Part shown: positions 558 to 5,101 of the stretch, piece after piece | How positions within the stretch are numbered: position 1 is the stretch's first letter | How the letters are laid out: the number at the start of each line of letters is the position of its first letter | IMG/VR virus record: IMGVR_UViG_3300024503_000485 | Coordinates: 62,001-126,000 of that record | Reading direction: 5' to 3' (one strand) | Length of the DNA: 64,000 nt | The notes under the pieces: generated by a model | Databases searched by the model: none | The model's input: only the letters and a program-made list of their open reading frames with translations | What the model was told of the DNA's origin: nothing | Position numbers and translations under genes: made by a program

Positions 558-614
558 TTTATAGCCTCCTTATGCCTTTAATGTAAATGACTTTATGCCT
601 ATCGCATAACAACT

Positions 615-643
615 ATTATGCGCTTTTTATTTAGCAAGATCAA
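615..643 (-). promoter_or_regulatory. Sigma70-like promoter TTGATC-N17-CATAAT with an embedded late-type TAAATA, upstream of gp32
   Basis: Minus strand TTGATC (643-638), 17 nt, CATAAT (620-615); TAAATA at 633-628. Confidence 0.55.
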
Positions 644-682
644 GTCCTTTCTAAAAATTTATTTCACCAAAAAAAATCCACT

Positions 683-1087
683 CTATGAGTGGATTTGGTG
701 ATAACGAATCATAGCCGCTGTTCTTGCTAAAAATAATTTCCACCGGATTTCTTCAGTAATTAAACCTTCAGGATCATCCGGTGTTGGGTCTGTTTGAATT
801 CTTTGTAGATCTTTTCTTCGATAAGATGTAATGATATCGTCAACTTCAATAATGTTATCTTCGCTGTCATCTGCAAATAAAACAATTTTGTGAGGATTGC
901 CTGTAAAAATTTTAGGTTTTTGTATTTTGATAGATCTTGCAAGGACCGGTCCTTTTTTGATCGCAATCTGAGCTGGTGACTCTATAGTTGTAGGTCTCCC
1001 AAAGAGTTCTTTCCCATTGAGACTCGTATTTGCCTGGCTTGTCCCAATTAAACTCATCGCAGCTAAGATTACTGCTAACCTTTTCAT
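683..1087 (-). CDS. Hypothetical protein with N-terminal signal peptide
   Basis: MKRLAVILAAMSLIGTSQA signal-like N-terminus; GAGGA SD upstream. Confidence 0.7.
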   Translation of the reverse strand: MKRLAVILAAMSLIGTSQANTSLNGKELFGRPTTIESPAQIAIKKGPVLARSIKIQKPKIFTGNPHKIVLFADDSEDNIIEVDDIITSYRRKDLQRIQTDPTPDDPEGLITEEIRWKLFLARTAAMIRYHQIHS

Positions 1088-1105: not shown

Positions 1106-1402
1106 TTATTGACAAGTCCTTGTAAGTGTTACACTACCGTCTGGATTGCGCACTTCAGTCCAAGGACTACATACTTGTTGTTGCGTATAAACGGGCGGTT
1201 GTTGAATAACCGCTGGCGGTTGTTGAACAACTACAGGACGAGTTGCGGCATATACCACAGCACCTCCAACTACAGCTGGAACTACCCAATTCCAACCTCT
1301 CCCATGATGCATATGGTGTCCGCCATGATAGCCATGATGTGGACCTGCTTGCGCACCAAAAGCAGATAAACCAATTAAACCTGCAATTAAGAGTTTTTTC
1401 AT
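1106..1402 (-). CDS. Small secreted/membrane His-Gly-rich, Pro/Val/Gln-rich protein
   Basis: Start reassigned to MKKLLIAG (ATG 1402, AAGGAGG SD); signal peptide ending AQA, HHGYHGGHH tract, hydrophobic segment, C-terminal Cys pair. Confidence 0.75.
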   Translation of the reverse strand: MKKLLIAGLIGLSAFGAQAGPHHGYHGGHHMHHGRGWNWVVPAVVGGAVVYAATRPVVVQQPPAVIQQPPVYTQQQVCSPWTEVRNPDGSVTLTRTCQ

Positions 1403-1424: not shown

Positions 1425-1452
1425 TAACGCCCCAATGCCAACTTTCGTTGAC
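1425..1452 (-). promoter_or_regulatory. ECF-sigma-like promoter motif GTCAACG-N15-GCGTTA (copy 1), overlapping a GAAA-loop hairpin
   Basis: Identical motif and spacing to the copy at 1691-1718. Confidence 0.5.
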
Positions 1453-1467
1453 AAGGGGCAACTAAAA

Positions 1468-1641
1468 TTACTTCTTAGCTTCTTCTTTCTTAGCAGGAGC
1501 TTTTGGAGCTTCCTTAGCAGCAGGTGCTGGCGCAGATGCAGCTGGTTTGGCTTCTGCTTTCTTTTCTTCTTTCTTAGGTGCATCTGCAGCGAAAGCGGAT
1601 ACTGCAAATAATGATGCTACTAAAGTTGCTACTAGTTTCAT
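1468..1641 (-). CDS. Small secreted Lys/Ala/Pro-rich low-complexity protein (57 aa)
   Basis: Start at MKLVATL (ATG 1641, AAGGA SD); signal peptide ending AFA, then a KEAP/AAK-rich tail. Confidence 0.75.
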   Translation of the reverse strand: MKLVATLVASLFAVSAFAADAPKKEEKKAEAKPAASAPAPAAKEAPKAPAKKEEAKK

Positions 1642-1690
1642 AGTAATTTCCTTTTTAAAAGCACAGACAATCAGTGCCTGTGTAATATTA

Positions 1691-1718
1691 TAACGCATTA
1701 ATAGGACCGAACGTTGAC
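1691..1718 (-). promoter_or_regulatory. ECF-sigma-like promoter motif GTCAACG-N15-GCGTTA (copy 2)
   Basis: Same bipartite motif and 15-nt spacer as 1425-1452. Confidence 0.5.
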
Positions 1719-1742: not shown

Positions 1743-1767
1743 AAAAGAAAGGGCACCTAAGTGCCCT
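1743..1767 (-). terminator. Intrinsic terminator
   Basis: AGGGCAC-loop-GTGCCCT hairpin followed by TTCTTTT on minus strand, just after stop at 1789. Confidence 0.8.
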
Positions 1768-1788: not shown

Positions 1789-3504
1789 TTATAGGCCTGC
1801 TAATTCTCTAACTCTTGCCAATTCTGCTAATTCAGGATTTTGTTCTGTTGATTGTTGTGGTGCCATTCTTTCTACAAATTTACGAGCAACTTGTTCTGCC
1901 TGCTCACCAAACTTCTTGCCTACCATTGTGCAAACACCCTCTGGGCCTTTAGGGAATGTATTAGATTCCTTATCATAGAAACTTGTGATAAACTCTGCAA
2001 GTTCTTGAACATTAATTGCTGTACGCTCTTTTCCTTGCTCATTGTCGTCACTGGCCATTTGAGGTTCGTCTTCGGGTGCTTCTTCGCCTCCTGCTTCGGG
2101 TTCTTCTTCTGAGTAGTCACCAAAATCTAATTGGCCGACTACATCTGGTGCGTTTTGTTCTAACCAATCTTTAACCAACCCTCTGCAACATGCCTCTGGA
2201 TCTTCTTTTGCCTTATCTTTAATGGCTTGGTCAAGTTTAGGATCTTCAATGATGCCTTTTAAACTTTCAATGGCATTGCTACCATCTACACCTGCTGGAA
2301 AATGTTGTCCAACTAATTCTTGTAATTCTTTAATCGCTGCGTCTTTTTGATCGGGATCTTGAATAGGGCTTGCTTCACCTAATTGATAAACCCAGTTTTC
2401 AAATTTTTCAAATGGATCATAATTTTCCATTTCAAATGTTTCTTCTTCGACAGCGGCATTGTTGGTCATTGCGACTATGTCGTCGTAGCCTATCGTGTTT
2501 CCTTCTTTCATTAGTCTATATAAGACCGGAAATACATTAGCAATGTCTTCTTTAAAATTTCTAACGGTAAATTTTTCTTTAAAATCTTCTACAACGTCTT
2601 GTGGTATTTCTTCACTATCGTATGCCTGGAAATTTTCTCTATATGCTTCGTAATGACTTTGTTTAGATAGTGCCTTAATTTGTTCACGTAGTCTATTTAG
2701 AGCCTCTCCGCTTCTTTCAACAATATTGTTTGTATCTGAATTCATTAAATCATTACGAACAACATAGTTGCTAAAACTTTTTAGTTGAGCAATTTCTTCG
2801 CTCATTTGTACAATTGATTTACCAATATCGTCGTATGGTACACCGCCATTAGCCACGTGACGTTGCATAGCACGAGCTCCTGCTAAATGAATGAAAGGAT
2901 ATTTAAATCTTTCACCGTCTTGGTTTTCAACAAATAATGCTGAAATATTACGTGTTCTAGCACCTGGTGCTTGATCGTCTGTTAATGCTTGACTATGTTT
3001 AATAATCAAACGTGTATCCATTAGTTTTTGATAGCTTACGGTCTTAGATCCGTACATTGTGCTTTCAGTAACATTCATTGTGCTTTCTCCGACTGGTGTT
3101 GGTTGTGTTGTAACCGCAGGTTCTGGTGAATTATGGCGGCTTAAAAATGCATAATCTCGTTTATCTAAATTGTCTTTAGTAATGTCACGAGTATCAAACG
3201 CCATTAACCTACGTTTAGCAAATAATCTTAATTCTCTTAAAAATCCAAACCAATTCTTCTTTTGAAGATCGTTCATTGATTCAGTAATTCCTGTACTGAA
3301 ATATACCTTCATAGAGTTTGGTTCAGCTAGGCTGATGCTAACATGGCCTACAGGTGTTTCACCTTCCATGTAATCAAAATCAAAAAATCTTGCTTCTTCT
3401 GGGTTTATTGTAATTTCGCTGGTTTCTGAACCTAGCTTTAACCCTTTAAAGCGGCTTCTAATTTTATAAAATAAATCTGTAGCAATATTGTTTGTAGCGT
3501 CCAT
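1789..3504 (-). CDS. Hypothetical protein, probable internal head/core protein (acidic C-terminal part)
   Basis: Long ORF; start reassigned to MDATNN (TAAATA 4 nt upstream); ends ELARVRELAGL like the scaffold C-terminus. Confidence 0.7.
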   Translation of the reverse strand: MDATNNIATDLFYKIRSRFKGLKLGSETSEITINPEEARFFDFDYMEGETPVGHVSISLAEPNSMKVYFSTGITESMNDLQKKNWFGFLRELRLFAKRRLMAFDTRDITKDNLDKRDYAFLSRHNSPEPAVTTQPTPVGESTMNVTESTMYGSKTVSYQKLMDTRLIIKHSQALTDDQAPGARTRNISALFVENQDGERFKYPFIHLAGARAMQRHVANGGVPYDDIGKSIVQMSEEIAQLKSFSNYVVRNDLMNSDTNNIVERSGEALNRLREQIKALSKQSHYEAYRENFQAYDSEEIPQDVVEDFKEKFTVRNFKEDIANVFPVLYRLMKEGNTIGYDDIVAMTNNAAVEEETFEMENYDPFEKFENWVYQLGEASPIQDPDQKDAAIKELQELVGQHFPAGVDGSNAIESLKGIIEDPKLDQAIKDKAKEDPEACCRGLVKDWLEQNAPDVVGQLDFGDYSEEEPEAGGEEAPEDEPQMASDDNEQGKERTAINVQELAEFITSFYDKESNTFPKGPEGVCTMVGKKFGEQAEQVARKFVERMAPQQSTEQNPELAELARVRELAGL

Positions 3505-3514
3505 TCTGTATTTA

Positions 3515-5101
3515 TCACATAAAGCCCGATACAAAGATCGGCATAGGCATTTGGTCTTCTGATAATTTATCAGTCATTTTTTCGTATACTTTAGGGTCCC
3601 AGTCCGCTAGTATGCTAGACATGCGAATTATTAACAATAATGCAGCCACTAAGTCGTCGTGTTCCCCAGATTTAGCTTTAAATCCAATTCCAGTAGCAAC
3701 GAATGTTTTTAACTCTGAAATTAAAGGTTTTGAACATAACTTCATTTTATGAGTTTCAATCATGTGTTTAAGTTGGCTACATGCAGAAATTTTTGTCTTA
3801 TGTGTAGTATTAAACCCTTTGCGGAATTTACGCACATGTCCTTTACGTATAGGCTCACTCAAGAATAATCCGGGGAAATTTTCCTCGCCAATATTTTGAA
3901 TACAAATTAAAGCAGCTTCACCTAAAGTGTTATTTTCAACACTATAATAAATTTGAGGATGACCGCCTTTTAATTCTCCCTGATCCTGGATATAAGAACA
4001 AATTTCTCTTAATATTTTTACTTGACTTTGTACTGGAGTTAAATTATGATACCATTCTGCTACTTGATCCATATGGGGCATTTCAAATACTTGAATAGCA
4101 CCATTGTCACCGCCTGTTCCTAAACTAGGATCTAATGCTACAAGATATGTTGCTTGCGGATTAATCTCTTTGTACCATCGTGTTTGTCCCATAGATAACA
4201 TAGGCTCAGTACCTTTTAATTCAGCAAGTTTAACTGAGTTAATTAACGTTTCGTCAAAGATCAAGAATTCACATTCAAATTCACGACGGAAACGTTCTTC
4301 TCCAATTTTTGCACGTTCTAATCTTGCCCATTCGTCATCTCGGTCTGGATGTTCGCTCCAGTGGGCAAAATAACTATGAAATCCGTTAACTCCTAATTTT
4401 TGTTCATTGCCAAATTCGTCAAATCTTTTGTTTGCTTCGGTCCAAATTAACGCAAACTGATCTTCGTCTGAGTTAGGTGTTGATGTAATGATACACTTAC
4501 CGCCTGTTGCTAGTGTAGGCGATAGGGCAGTCCAGAATTCTTTAGCTTTCTCGGGAGGTTGCACAAACGCAAACTCATCACAATAAATCAATGATAGAGA
4601 TTTACCACGACCAGTATTTTCTGTAGTTGTGGTTGCTTGTATACGAGCACCGTTATCGTATTCGATTGTATTTCTATTGTATGAATAAACACCTGCACGT
4701 ATAAAATCTGGAAGGTTTTCGTAACCATAACGGTAACGATCCATAATATCTTTTGCACCTTCGTATTTGTGTGCGGCAATAAGAACTTGACAATCAGGTA
4801 CAAACATTGTGTACCAGAGTAAGTAAGCAACGGCACATGTGGTCTTACCCATCTGACGAGGCAACATAGCAATACATTGTTTGTTGCCGTGATAGGCTTC
4901 AATTAACCGTTCTTGGTATTCGTACGGTTCAAAGGGAATACTACCTCGAACAGGATGTTGAATTTTAATAAAATTTTTAGCGAAATAAAGAGGACCTGTA
5001 ACAGGATCCATACACGCTTCGAGATGTTTAACTTCTTCAAGTGTGTATCGTTGCTGTTTATGCGCCTTCTTAATTAATACGCCATCTAATGATTTTGCCA
5101 T
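3515..5101 (-). CDS. gp17: Terminase large subunit (T4 gp17-like)
   Basis: YQ adenine-binding motif, Walker A PRQMGKT, Walker B LIYCDE, ITSTP motif III, nuclease ALD...HDDLV. Confidence 0.95.
   Translation of the reverse strand: MAKSLDGVLIKKAHKQQRYTLEEVKHLEACMDPVTGPLYFAKNFIKIQHPVRGSIPFEPYEYQERLIEAYHGNKQCIAMLPRQMGKTTCAVAYLLWYTMFVPDCQVLIAAHKYEGAKDIMDRYRYGYENLPDFIRAGVYSYNRNTIEYDNGARIQATTTTENTGRGKSLSLIYCDEFAFVQPPEKAKEFWTALSPTLATGGKCIITSTPNSDEDQFALIWTEANKRFDEFGNEQKLGVNGFHSYFAHWSEHPDRDDEWARLERAKIGEERFRREFECEFLIFDETLINSVKLAELKGTEPMLSMGQTRWYKEINPQATYLVALDPSLGTGGDNGAIQVFEMPHMDQVAEWYHNLTPVQSQVKILREICSYIQDQGELKGGHPQIYYSVENNTLGEAALICIQNIGEENFPGLFLSEPIRKGHVRKFRKGFNTTHKTKISACSQLKHMIETHKMKLCSKPLISELKTFVATGIGFKAKSGEHDDLVAALLLIIRMSSILADWDPKVYEKMTDKLSEDQMPMPIFVSGFM

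What the first reader, a model, noticed from the sequence alone, without database searches (positions are those of the whole stretch)
1425..1718. Twin GTCAACG-N15-GCGTTA motif: ECF-sigma-like promoters on small secreted proteins
Seen: the identical bipartite motif with the same 15-nt spacer precedes two consecutive genes (1712-1718/1691-1696 and 1446-1452/1425-1430), each followed shortly by TAATAT; the spacers are unrelated. Established: ECF sigma promoters typically have AAC in -35 and CGT in -10. Inference: this is a third promoter class, read by a host envelope-stress ECF sigma or a phage-encoded sigma, driving exported proteins.
Basis: partly seen in the sequence, partly recalled or inferred. 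Interest (0 to 1): 0.65.

Follow-up and report, generated by a model that had tools for sequence, protein, structure and literature searches.

The report
Host ECF-sigma promoters in a phage
Two promoters in a freshwater jumbo phage carry the exact recognition sequence of a bacterial stress sigma-factor family (ECF37, the family of Acinetobacter SigAb), so the host's envelope or metal stress alarm probably switches on the phage's small exported proteins.

Summary
GTCAACG-N15-GCGTTA stands twice on the minus strand (1691-1718, 1425-1452), and nowhere else in the 219-kb phage record.

It is a conserved promoter, not chance. In about 35 distinct sites of related metagenomic phages the two blocks are kept (tGTCAAC, then 16-17 nt, then CGTTATATA) while the spacers differ freely.

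The motif equals the experimentally defined promoter of the Acinetobacter ECF sigma SigAb (-35 GTCAAC, -10 CGTT, 17-nt spacer). It also equals the ECF Hub consensus for family ECF37 (GTCAAC / CGTTAT).

No sigma gene was found in six phage records, so a host sigma is the likely reader. That sigma family (NCBIfam NF006550) scores over its cut-off in 119 of 151 Burkholderiales genomes.

Burkholderiales chromosomes carry look-alikes of phage gene A, and one of gene B, behind the same motif. 247 Acinetobacter genomes do not. The host is therefore probably a freshwater betaproteobacterium.

River metatranscriptome contigs cover the cassette but not its first promoter or the upstream terminator.

The promoter class is known; its use by a large, probably lytic phage is a new setting. 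The start site and sigma dependence remain untested.

The parts
1750..1767 (-). Intrinsic terminator hairpin (followed by a T-run) that ends the upstream 581-aa virion-protein gene and insulates the cassette
   Evidence: Terminator scan. The hairpin is conserved in nearly all relatives. No RNA contig crosses it in four metatranscriptomes.
1691..1718 (-). Promoter P1 of ECF37/SigAb type: -35 GTCAAC at 1713-1718, 17-nt spacer, -10 CGTT at 1692-1695, extended to CGTTATAAT at 1687-1695. Predicted start near 1681-1684.
   Evidence: Blocks conserved with free spacers in relatives. Identical to the SigAb/ECF37 consensus. The start position is inferred, not mapped.
1662..1682 (-). Stem-loop at the very 5' end of the predicted gene A mRNA (7 pairs, 7-nt loop)
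   Evidence: Read from the sequence. In 21 relatives the stem begins 9-10 nt after CGTT, and all 6 predicted pairs show compensatory changes.
1468..1641 (-). Gene A: 57 aa, signal peptide followed by an Ala/Pro/Lys/Glu-rich low-complexity tail
   Evidence: Start at 1641 behind a Shine-Dalgarno sequence, conserved in relatives. 67% identity over 27 aa to a Burkholderiales chromosomal protein that has the same promoter type. No Pfam, NCBIfam or PHROG family.
1425..1452 (-). Promoter P2 of the same type: -35 GTCAAC at 1447-1452, 17-nt spacer, -10 CGTT at 1426-1429. Predicted start near 1416-1419, giving a short leader with AGGAGG.
   Evidence: The same site is conserved in L007 and L073. In L038, L055, L057 and L067 a gene-B-type gene is headed directly by the motif.
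1106..1402 (-). Gene B: 98 aa, signal peptide, His-rich stretch, hydrophobic helix, Pro/Val/Gln-rich stretch, and a C-terminal hairpin between two Cys
   Evidence: 331 metagenomic homologues, none named. The AlphaFold model is mostly low-confidence.
683..1087 (-). Gene C: 134 aa, signal peptide, largely disordered, conserved C-terminal helix. It starts 18 nt after gene B with no promoter of its own.
   Evidence: In L035 a gene-C-type gene follows the motif directly.
674..696 (-). Intrinsic terminator that closes the cassette, ahead of the gp32-like gene's own sigma-70-like promoter (615-643)

Best explanation
The two motifs are promoters read by the host RNA polymerase carrying an ECF sigma factor of the ECF37 family. 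This is NCBIfam NF006550, the family of Cupriavidus RpoR and Acinetobacter SigAb. Sigma region 4 would bind GTCAAC at -35, and region 2 would bind CGTT(AT) at -10 across a 16-17-nt spacer. Transcription would start about 8-10 nt further on.

The promoters head a self-contained cassette: terminator, P1, gene A, P2, gene B, gene C, terminator. The cassette sits between a virion-protein gene and the gp32-like gene and encodes three small exported proteins. In bacteria this sigma is held by a membrane anti-sigma factor and released on envelope or metal stress. The cassette is therefore probably switched on when the infected cell raises that alarm, independently of the phage's early (sigma-70-like) and late (T4-like) programmes.

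Genes A and B resemble small exported proteins that betaproteobacteria express from the same promoter type. The phage has therefore captured, or copies, part of its host's ECF37 regulon. The host is most likely a freshwater member of the Burkholderiales.

Shown: the motif, its conservation, its identity with the known consensus, its bacterial counterparts, and RNA coverage of the cassette. Inferred: which sigma reads it, the start site, the trigger, and what the proteins do.
For: Motif identity:
- SigAb's promoter was defined by saturating mutagenesis, reporters and ChIP-seq as -35 GTCAAC, -10 CGTT and a 17-nt spacer. A 16-nt spacer is tolerated; 18 nt gives 3-fold less activity.
- The ChIP-validated sigAb and sabS promoters read TGTCAAC-N17-CGTTATATA; the third, relA, reads TGTCAAC-N16-CGTTACACA. 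The first two equal the phage consensus.
- The ECF Hub consensus for ECF37 is GTCAAC / CGTTAT.

Conservation:
- 35 distinct sites downstream of the 581-aa gene in 80 related loci keep both blocks with unrelated spacers. The spacer is 17 nt in 31 sites and 16 nt in 4.
- An IMG/VR scan for the 18-base form found at least 120 contigs. Of 80 fetched, 59 have a gene-A-like ORF and 8 a gene-B-like ORF just downstream.

Not sigma-70: the scan calls nothing at either site on the coding strand.

Host rather than phage sigma:
- No Sigma70_r2 or r4_2 hit over threshold in G000-G005; r4 was searched in G000 only and was also negative.
- There are only 1-2 sites per phage genome.
- Each of the two Acinetobacter genomes checked has exactly two, in front of sigAb and sabS.

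Bacterial counterparts:
- 17 of 30 fetched Burkholderiales loci that hit the gene A profile have GT[CA]AAC-N16/17-CGT 45-95 nt upstream of a gene-A-like gene. L236-L238 show the same, and L235 shows it for a gene-B-like gene.
- SigAb and a Methylophilaceae ECF both exceed the NF006550 cut-off. Both are followed by a DUF3106 gene.
- NF006550 is over its cut-off in 119 of 151 Burkholderiales genomes and in 0 of 14 control genomes.

Expression: in four river metatranscriptomes, contigs cover 708-1656 and 1788-2100 but never 1657-1787.

Leader: the covarying hairpin starts 9-10 nt after CGTT.
Against: - No transcription start has been mapped. Logan contigs cannot show starts, and a hole in them proves nothing.
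- The one discrete RNA end seen is followed by adapter sequence and comes from an L073-type strain. It lies in the hairpin loop, 20 nt after CGTT, about 11 nt beyond the predicted start. It may be a processing site or a reverse-transcriptase stop.
- The host is unknown, so it cannot be shown that it encodes this sigma.
- The phage records are 31-80% complete, so a phage sigma in a missing part, or one too diverged for Pfam, is not excluded.
- In bacteria the base after GTCAAC is usually C. In the phage sites it is mostly G, T or A. Burkholderiales sites also vary at this position.
- Similarity between genes A and B and the bacterial proteins is partly compositional. E-values run from 1e-4 to 2e-8 for A; for B the best is 4e-13 (most 1e-4 to 1e-6), and most of the bacterial gene-B-like hits have different C-terminal ends.
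- In C. metallidurans, ECF37 promoter assignments were judged prone to false positives, and rpoR itself was read by RpoD.
Confidence: 0.8

Rival explanations
1. The promoters are read by a sigma factor encoded by the phage itself, either in the part of the genome not held or too diverged to detect.
For: The records are incomplete: 62% for G000 and at most 80% for G001. Some phages do encode ECF-like sigmas (general knowledge; mentioned in PMC7318152).
Against: No Sigma70_r2 or r4_2 hit over threshold in six records totalling about 1.1 Mb. A dedicated sigma for one or two promoters per genome would be uneconomical. The identical extended motif is used on bacterial chromosomes by a known host sigma family, in front of look-alike genes.
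Confidence: 0.06
2. They are sigma-70 promoters that use TATAAT/TATATA as the -10 box, with GTCAAC as the binding site of an activator, in the manner of T4 MotA/AsiA middle promoters.
For: TATAAT follows both sites in the window. The phage is T4-like in its late promoters and its gp32. Its relative PA5oct depends on host RNA polymerase.
Against: The distance from GTCAAC to TATAAT is 20 nt at site 1 and 23 nt at site 2, so the supposed -10 box is not in register with the conserved blocks. The sigma-70 scan finds no match there. In relatives, CGTT is kept at a fixed 16-17 nt from GTCAAC, while only an A/T-rich tail is conserved after it. A middle class would have many members, and there are two. 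In high-GC bacteria the same blocks occur with no TATAAT at all.
Confidence: 0.08
3. The motif is an operator for a dimeric DNA-binding protein (AACG...CGTT reads as a short inverted repeat), or some other non-promoter signal.
For: AACG and CGTT are reverse complements in the two window copies.
Against: The G after AAC is not conserved: it is G in 20 of 35 sites. The two blocks are asymmetric (tGTCAAC against CGTTATATA). The spacer varies between 16 and 17 nt. Position and orientation relative to genes are always those of a promoter.
Confidence: 0.03
4. The two copies are a chance repeat, or the leftover of a local duplication with no function.
For: There are only two copies in 219 kb.
Against: 0.05 copies are expected by chance. 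The spacers and flanks are unrelated, so this is not a duplication. The blocks are conserved in phages whose neighbouring protein is only 68-78% identical.
Confidence: 0.01

Closest known systems
SigAb-dependent promoters of Acinetobacter baumannii (P_sigAb, P_sabS, P_relA; mBio 2025, PMC12153292)
   Same: Same -35 (TGTCAAC), same -10 with its tail (CGTTATATA), same preferred 17-nt spacer with 16 tolerated, and an A/T-rich region upstream.
   Different: The Acinetobacter promoters drive the sigma operon, relA and a small RNA, not exported proteins. The base after GTCAAC is C there and variable in the phage. Profiles of genes A and B find nothing convincing in 247 Acinetobacter genomes, so Acinetobacter is probably not the host.
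ECF37 family of ECF sigma factors (ECF Hub classification; RpoR of Cupriavidus metallidurans; NCBIfam NF006550)
   Same: The predicted family consensus is -35 GTCAAC and -10 CGTTAT. The operon is sigma, then a membrane protein, then a DUF3106 protein, as in sigAb-aabA-aabB.
   Different: For this family the consensus is a database prediction. In C. metallidurans no ECF37-dependent start was confirmed. The phage sites lie on a virus, not next to the sigma gene.
Burkholderiales chromosomal genes for small exported Ala/Pro/Lys-rich proteins behind GTCAAC-N16/17-CGTT (found here: L242-L250, L253, L254, L256, L260, L269, L270, L236-L238)
   Same: Same promoter type at the same distance, and the same protein build as gene A. 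L243 is 67% identical over 27 aa. L235 is the counterpart for gene B.
   Different: They are chromosomal and single, and often lie in high-GC DNA where the -10 tail is not A/T-rich. I found no published description or family name.
Phage morons (for example lambda bor/lom and the HK97 morons): extra genes with their own promoter and terminator set between conserved genes
   Same: A promoter-genes-terminator unit sits between two conserved genes. It is present, absent or differently composed among close relatives. Eight relatives lack it, and L026 shows a deletion scar.
   Different: Classical morons sit in temperate phages and use sigma-70 promoters expressed from the prophage (my own knowledge). 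This one sits in a large T4-like, probably lytic phage and uses an alternative, stress-gated sigma.
Pseudomonas jumbo phage PA5oct (Arenbergviridae), the nearest cultured relative
   Same: Large terminase subunit 55% identical, similar gene order around it, and dependence on host RNA polymerase with sigma-70-like promoters.
   Different: It has no cassette at this place and no GTCAAC-N16/17-CGTT anywhere in its 286,783 bp.
E. coli acid shock protein Asr (a periplasmic, disordered, Lys/Ala/His-rich protein)
   Same: Similar size, a signal peptide and similar composition. It was the nearest named Atlas cluster for gene A, at a score of 0.80, which is a lead only.
   Different: Neither the phage nor the bacterial proteins hit Pfam Asr even at E = 5. 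This is an analogy, not membership.

Membership tests
ECF37 / SigAb-type (NF006550) promoter | -35 element GTCAAC | tested here: met
   Exact at 1713-1718 and 1447-1452. Of 35 related sites, 26 have GTCAAC and the rest GTAAAC, GTTTAC or GTTAAC. Defined.
ECF37 / SigAb-type (NF006550) promoter | -10 element CGTT (family consensus CGTTAT) | tested here: met
   CGTTAT at site 1 and CGTTAC at site 2. P_relA also reads CGTTAC. In relatives, A follows CGTT in 33 of 35 sites and T comes next in 32 of 35.
ECF37 / SigAb-type (NF006550) promoter | Spacer of 17 nt between the elements (16 tolerated, 18 weaker) | tested here: met
   17 nt at both window sites. Relatives: 31 sites with 17 and 4 with 16. IMG/VR sample: 76 with 17 and 4 with 16.
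ECF37 / SigAb-type (NF006550) promoter | A/T-rich UP-like stretch upstream of the -35 element | tested here: inconclusive
   Site 1 is preceded by an A/T-rich run. Site 2 is preceded by the end of gene A and a short C-run. No functional test was possible.
ECF37 / SigAb-type (NF006550) promoter | Transcription starts a few nt downstream of the -10 element | tested here: inconclusive
   RNA contigs cover the genes and leader up to 1656 and leave 1657-1787 empty in four runs. One discrete RNA end lies 20 nt after CGTT in a variant strain. Contigs cannot show starts.
ECF37 / SigAb-type (NF006550) promoter | Activity depends on the cognate sigma factor | not testable with these tools
   This needs reporters or in vitro transcription.
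ECF37 / SigAb-type (NF006550) promoter | The cell in which it works encodes the sigma | not testable with these tools
   The host is unknown. The sigma scores over its cut-off in 119 of 151 Burkholderiales genomes, is present in Acinetobacter, and is absent from six phage records.
Sigma-70 (housekeeping) promoter | TTGACA-like and TATAAT-like hexamers 16-18 nt apart | tested here: not met
   The scan finds none at either site on the minus strand. TATAAT lies 20 and 23 nt from GTCAAC.
T4-type late promoter | TATAAATA-like box just upstream of the start, with no -35 element | tested here: not met
   This phage's late-type box ATAAATA (31 in the genome, 23 upstream of genes) is absent from both regions.
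T4 MotA-type middle promoter | Activator box at a fixed distance (about 12 nt) from a sigma-70 -10 box, with many copies per genome | tested here: not met
   The distance from box to TATAAT is variable (20 and 23 nt), and there are only two sites per genome. MotA and AsiA homologues were not searched for.
Phage moron | Own promoter and terminator, inserted between conserved genes, variable among relatives | tested here: met
   Terminators at 1750-1767 and 674-696. The cassette is absent in L011, L026, L029, L031, L053, L054, L063 and L079, and consists of A only, B only, C only or A+B+C in others.
Asr (acid shock protein, PF06392), for gene A | Match to the family profile | tested here: not met
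   No hit at E up to 5. Only a feature-space lead at 0.80.

The most novel reading that the evidence does not exclude
A widespread module in freshwater phages, made of an ECF37-type promoter plus a small exported disordered protein, is a copy of the core of the betaproteobacterial ECF37 stress regulon. Through it, large, probably lytic phages would use their host's envelope or metal stress sigma as a sensor of infection or of the surroundings. They would top up, or interfere with, the host's periplasmic stress response, for example by protecting the envelope until lysis or by excluding other phages. As a by-product, the data name the first conserved protein target of this poorly known sigma family, and they show that the 'Acinetobacter-specific' SigAb belongs to a family common across beta- and gammaproteobacteria.
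Probability: 0.45. Interest if true: 0.72.

Novelty: new member of a known kind. Interest (0 to 1): 0.6.

Why it matters
Phage gene expression is usually described as sigma-70 early genes followed by phage-directed middle and late classes. Here a large T4-like phage appears to hand a small set of genes to a host stress sigma factor. That is a different control logic: expression gated by the state of the host envelope, not by the phage clock.

The module is common in lake and river viromes (at least 120 IMG/VR contigs), so it is probably ecologically relevant.

The motif also works as a host marker. It points to hosts with an NF006550/ECF37 sigma for a clade that has no cultured member.

For bacterial physiology, the result links three things that were known separately. 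These are SigAb of Acinetobacter (a copper and nickel stress sigma with only three known direct promoters), RpoR/ECF37 of Cupriavidus, and a family of unnamed small exported proteins that seems to be the regular ECF37 target in Burkholderiales. All of this can be tested with existing reporter strains.

Tried and rejected
- Megablast of 6 kb against cultured phages found no match. Only protein-level kinship to PA5oct was seen.
The sites were then collected from the loci by pattern instead.
- The one-mismatch third site, at G000 150343-150370, lacks CGT and scores below 10 bits on the weight matrix.
- An extra pattern hit in G002 lies antisense inside coding sequence and has no A/T tail, so it is chance.
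- Acinetobacter was my first host guess after the SigAb match. It was downgraded for three reasons. Gene B as a single protein, the gene B profile and the gene A profile found nothing convincing in 247 genomes. N17 spacing is also used in Burkholderiales. The samples are river and lake water.
- Pattern counts of TGTCAAC-N16/17-CGTT in five small Burkholderiales genomes equal the reversed-pattern control. Only context showed which sites are real.
- Betaproteobacterial ECF genes contain a GTCAAC...CGTT match inside their coding sequence, in region 4. This is a trap, not a promoter. I did not find the motif upstream of those three sigma genes.
- AlphaFold models of B and C were low-confidence (mean pLDDT 66 and 64), so no fold search was made.
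- Pfam, NCBIfam and PHROG gave nothing for A, B or C. The Atlas leads (PXPV, BA14K, Asr) stayed below 0.9.
- No DUF3106 (anti-sigma partner) was found in five phage records.
- The gene C homologue recorded at NCBI lies on a phage-like contig of a bulk metagenome assembly and gives no host clue.
- Read laying was given 1,541 letters.
Full report
**Setting.** The window is bases 62,001-126,000 of a 219,444-bp IMG/VR virus record. The record is estimated 62% complete and has 37.8% G+C. The nearest cultured relatives are jumbo myoviruses. Pseudomonas phage PA5oct has a large terminase subunit 55% identical; Sinorhizobium phage Phosso and Agrobacterium phage Atu_ph07 follow. All genes around the finding lie on the minus strand, in this order:
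- large terminase, 3515-5101;
- a 581-aa virion-protein homologue, 1789-3534 (phrog_13484);
- three small genes, here called A (1641-1468, 57 aa), B (1402-1106, 98 aa) and C (1087-683, 134 aa);
- a gp32-like gene from 557 downwards.

A, B and C all begin with typical signal peptides.

**The observation.** GTCAACG-N15-GCGTTA stands at 1691-1718 and 1425-1452 on the minus strand, with unrelated spacers.
- The core GTCAAC-N17-CGTTA occurs twice in the window against 0.05 expected.
- These are the only exact copies in the 219 kb.
- Both are followed by TATAATAT, but at offsets that differ by 3 nt.
- A sigma-70 consensus scan calls no promoter at either place on the coding strand.
- The same scan finds intrinsic terminators at 1750-1767 and 674-696, so the three genes form a bracketed unit.

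**Conservation.** A search of IMG/VR with the 581-aa neighbour returned 80 loci at 68-100% amino-acid identity.
- In most of them the same two blocks follow that gene's terminator by a few dozen bases. The spacers differ freely. The consensus is tGTCAAC, then 16-17 nt, then CGTTATATATA.
- There are 35 distinct sites. The spacer is 17 nt in 31 of them and 16 nt in 4.
- A weight matrix from these sites scores the two window sites at 29.4 and 29.0 bits. Nothing else in the 219 kb scores above 11.2, and shuffled genomes reach 9-18.
- Five large relatives (110-282 kb) have one such place each. One further hit is a chance match inside a gene.
- The cassette is variable. Some relatives have gene A alone. 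In others a B-type or C-type gene sits directly behind the motif. Eight relatives have no cassette at all, and L026 keeps a deletion scar inside the spacer.

This is the behaviour of a promoter that belongs to a mobile gene unit. It is not a general phage promoter class. The general classes are present and distinct. TTGAC-N17-19-TAYAAT occurs 28 times, 24 of them upstream of genes, mostly at 9.8-34 kb. ATAAATA occurs 31 times, 23 of them within 45 nt of a start codon.

**Identity of the motif.** A full-text search for the two blocks led to the study of SigAb, an ECF sigma factor of Acinetobacter baumannii (mBio 2025, PMC12153292).
- Saturating mutagenesis, reporters and ChIP-seq define its promoter as -35 GTCAAC, -10 CGTT and a 17-nt spacer. 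A 16-nt spacer is tolerated, and 18 nt is 3-fold weaker.
- Two of the three validated promoters, in front of sigAb and sabS, read TGTCAAC-N17-CGTTATATA. The relA promoter reads TGTCAAC-N16-CGTTACACA.
- That is the phage consensus, base for base, including the T before the -35 block and the A/T tail after CGTT.
- Independently, a 2026 paper on Cupriavidus metallidurans lists the ECF Hub consensus for family ECF37 (its RpoR) as GTCAAC / CGTTAT.

SigAb and betaproteobacterial sigmas are one family. SigAb scores 224 bits and a Methylophilaceae sigma 273 bits against NCBIfam NF006550, whose cut-off is 173. Both are followed by a small membrane protein and a DUF3106 protein.

**Whose sigma?**
- Six records of this phage clade, together about 1.1 Mb, show no Sigma70_r2 or r4_2 hit over threshold; r4 was searched in G000 only. 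Five of them show no DUF3106.
Of the 80 loci shown, 32 are Acinetobacter and 2 are Alkanindiges. In the Acinetobacter loci the hit lies upstream of sigAb or of the small RNA sabS. Each of the two Acinetobacter genomes checked has exactly two.
- Several other gammaproteobacterial MAGs carry the motif, with a 16-nt spacer, in front of a sigma gene 37-43% identical to SigAb.
- Betaproteobacterial MAGs carry it in front of genes for exported proteins (L119, L146, L155). They also encode the sigma.
- NF006550 scores over its cut-off in 119 of 151 sampled Burkholderiales genomes and in none of 14 control genomes.

A host sigma of this family is therefore the economical reader.

**Bacterial counterparts of the cassette genes, and the host.**
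- A profile of the gene B family found 11 of 401 Burkholderiales genomes and 0 of 247 Acinetobacter genomes (single-protein search).
- One gene-B-like gene, in a 2.1-Mb genome of 46% G+C, has TGTCAACC-N17-CGTT 45 nt upstream.
- While looking at motif hits in small Burkholderiales genomes, I found three gene-A-like genes 68-92 nt behind the motif (L236-L238).
- A profile of gene A then hit 37 of 401 Burkholderiales genomes. In Acinetobacter it hit 3 of 247, all marginal and none with the motif.
- In 17 of the 30 fetched Burkholderiales loci, a gene-A-like gene lies 45-95 nt downstream of GT[CA]AAC-N16/17-CGT. By rough arithmetic, such a match within 160 nt is expected in fewer than 1 locus in 100.
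- The best case, L243, is 67% identical to phage A over the signal peptide and the start of the mature part.

The similarity is partly compositional, and most gene-B-like proteins have other C-terminal ends. I therefore call these look-alikes with the same build and the same promoter, not proven orthologues. The phage comes from riverine metagenomes, and most relatives come from what I take, from their IMG sample numbers, to be lake and river samples. I put the host in the Burkholderiales at about 0.6, and in Acinetobacter or another gammaproteobacterium with this sigma at about 0.25. G+C content is no guide here: PA5oct, as I recall, has about 33% against about 66% in its host.

**Expression.** Six river metatranscriptomes hold the stretch. 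Four were laid on 560-2100.
- In all four, contigs tile from about 708-723 up to at least 1575. This covers genes C and B, the P2 region and gene A. In two runs the contigs reach 1656, within the leader.
- In three runs, contigs also cover the 3' end of the upstream gene from 1788-1806.
- No contig lies on 1657-1787, which holds P1 and the upstream terminator. DNA contamination would be expected to fill that gap. The tool warns, however, that holes prove nothing and that contigs cannot show starts.
- In two runs the leader contig switches to the sequence of an L073-type strain and ends, followed by adapter letters, at a G in the loop of the leader hairpin. This is 20 nt after CGTT. It is a discrete RNA end close to the predicted start, possibly a processing site or a reverse-transcriptase stop.

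**Leader.** In 21 gene-A-type relatives a stem-loop begins 9-10 nt after CGTT. All six predicted pairs show compensatory changes. In the window it is 1682-1662. A hairpin at the very 5' end is a common way to stabilise an mRNA (general knowledge). Its fixed position fits a start at about 1681-1684. P2 would give a short leader of about 15 nt ending in AGGAGG.

**The proteins.**
- A is a signal peptide plus an Ala/Pro/Lys/Glu-rich tail.
- B has a His-rich stretch, a hydrophobic helix, a Pro/Val/Gln-rich stretch and a small hairpin between two Cys.
- C is mostly disordered with a confident C-terminal helix.

None has a named family. The Atlas puts them in many virus-only clusters. It offers PXPV and BA14K for B and Asr for A, as leads only. 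Their function is open. SigAb responds to copper and nickel stress, and B is His-rich, so a periplasmic role in metal or envelope protection is a reasonable guess. Exclusion of other phages is another. Neither was tested.

**Reach.** A scan of IMG/VR for the 18-base form stopped at 120 contigs. Of 80 fetched, 59 have a gene-A-like and 8 a gene-B-like gene 25-56 nt downstream. Fourteen of these sit in loci with at least 3 kb on both sides and no terminase, 581-aa or gp32 homologue. The module therefore also lies in other genome contexts, or in other phages. PA5oct has neither the cassette nor a single GTCAAC-N16/17-CGTT.

**Verdict.** These are promoters of the ECF37/SigAb class, almost certainly read by a host sigma, and they drive a moron-like cassette of small exported proteins. 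The promoter class is known. Its presence in a large T4-like phage, together with look-alikes of the host's own targets, is a new setting for it. The start sites, the sigma dependence, the trigger, the host and the function of the proteins remain to be shown.

Noticed in passing
L098, L150, L153, L165 (genome-contig loci); L211-L213: Sigma genes 37-43% identical to SigAb sit behind the same TGTCAACC-N16-CGTTATATA motif in non-Acinetobacter gammaproteobacterial MAGs. NF006550-type sigmas score over the cut-off in 119 of 151 Burkholderiales genomes. SigAb is therefore a member of a widespread family, not an Acinetobacter-only invention as the paper's title suggests.
   Followed up: partly
L242-L250, L253, L254, L256, L260, L269, L270, L236-L238: An unnamed family of 46-110-aa exported Ala/Pro/Lys(His)-rich proteins in Burkholderiales is regularly preceded by GTCAAC-N16/17-CGTT. 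It is a candidate core target of the ECF37 sigma.
   Followed up: partly
L155 1832-2251 (MAG 'uncultured beta proteobacterium' Loclat bin): Two divergent ECF37-type promoters stand back to back. One faces a secreted zinc-metalloprotease-like gene (HEIGH motif) and the other a 379-aa lipoprotein-like gene.
   Followed up: no
window 600-660 (-), and the same place in L011, L026, L029, L031, L053, L054: The leader of the gp32-like gene is almost invariant among relatives. It holds a TTGATC-N17-CATAAT promoter and then a hairpin around 603-622. This may be a translational operator like the one on T4 gene 32 mRNA.
   Followed up: no
whole record G000, e.g. 9.8-34 kb and upstream of structural genes: There are two clean promoter classes. 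A block of about 20 strong TTGACA-N17-TATAAT promoters sits in front of small early genes. T4-like ATAAATA boxes lie within 45 nt of 23 starts, 4 of them in the window. A gp55-like late sigma was not searched for.
   Followed up: partly
L026, about 60-90 nt after the 581-aa gene: The -35 block and the first half of the spacer of a relative's promoter (as in L020/L023) are joined directly to the sequence upstream of gp32. This looks like a deletion scar from loss of the cassette.
   Followed up: no
window 1656/1657; L073 7280: RNA contigs of two runs end, followed by Illumina adapter letters, at one base in the loop of the 5' hairpin of a variant strain. It may be an RNase cut or a reverse-transcriptase stop.
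   Followed up: partly
P0096, P0101, P0113, P0118, L057 (gene B family): Gene B comes with at least three different C-terminal ends behind the same N-terminal part. One, the Cys-Asn-Cys type, resembles the end of chromosomal proteins in two Burkholderiales genomes (L219, L220).
   Followed up: no
L211-L213, inside the sigma genes: The coding sequence for the conserved region-4 stretch of these sigma genes itself reads GTCAACG-N-GCGTT. Pattern scans for the promoter pick it up, so it is a source of false positives.
   Followed up: yes
L073 / L072-L077, about 1.5 kb after the 581-aa gene: In this sub-clade the same A-B cassette, with both promoters, lies about 1.5 kb further downstream, behind an extra gene. 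The unit therefore moves as a block.
   Followed up: no
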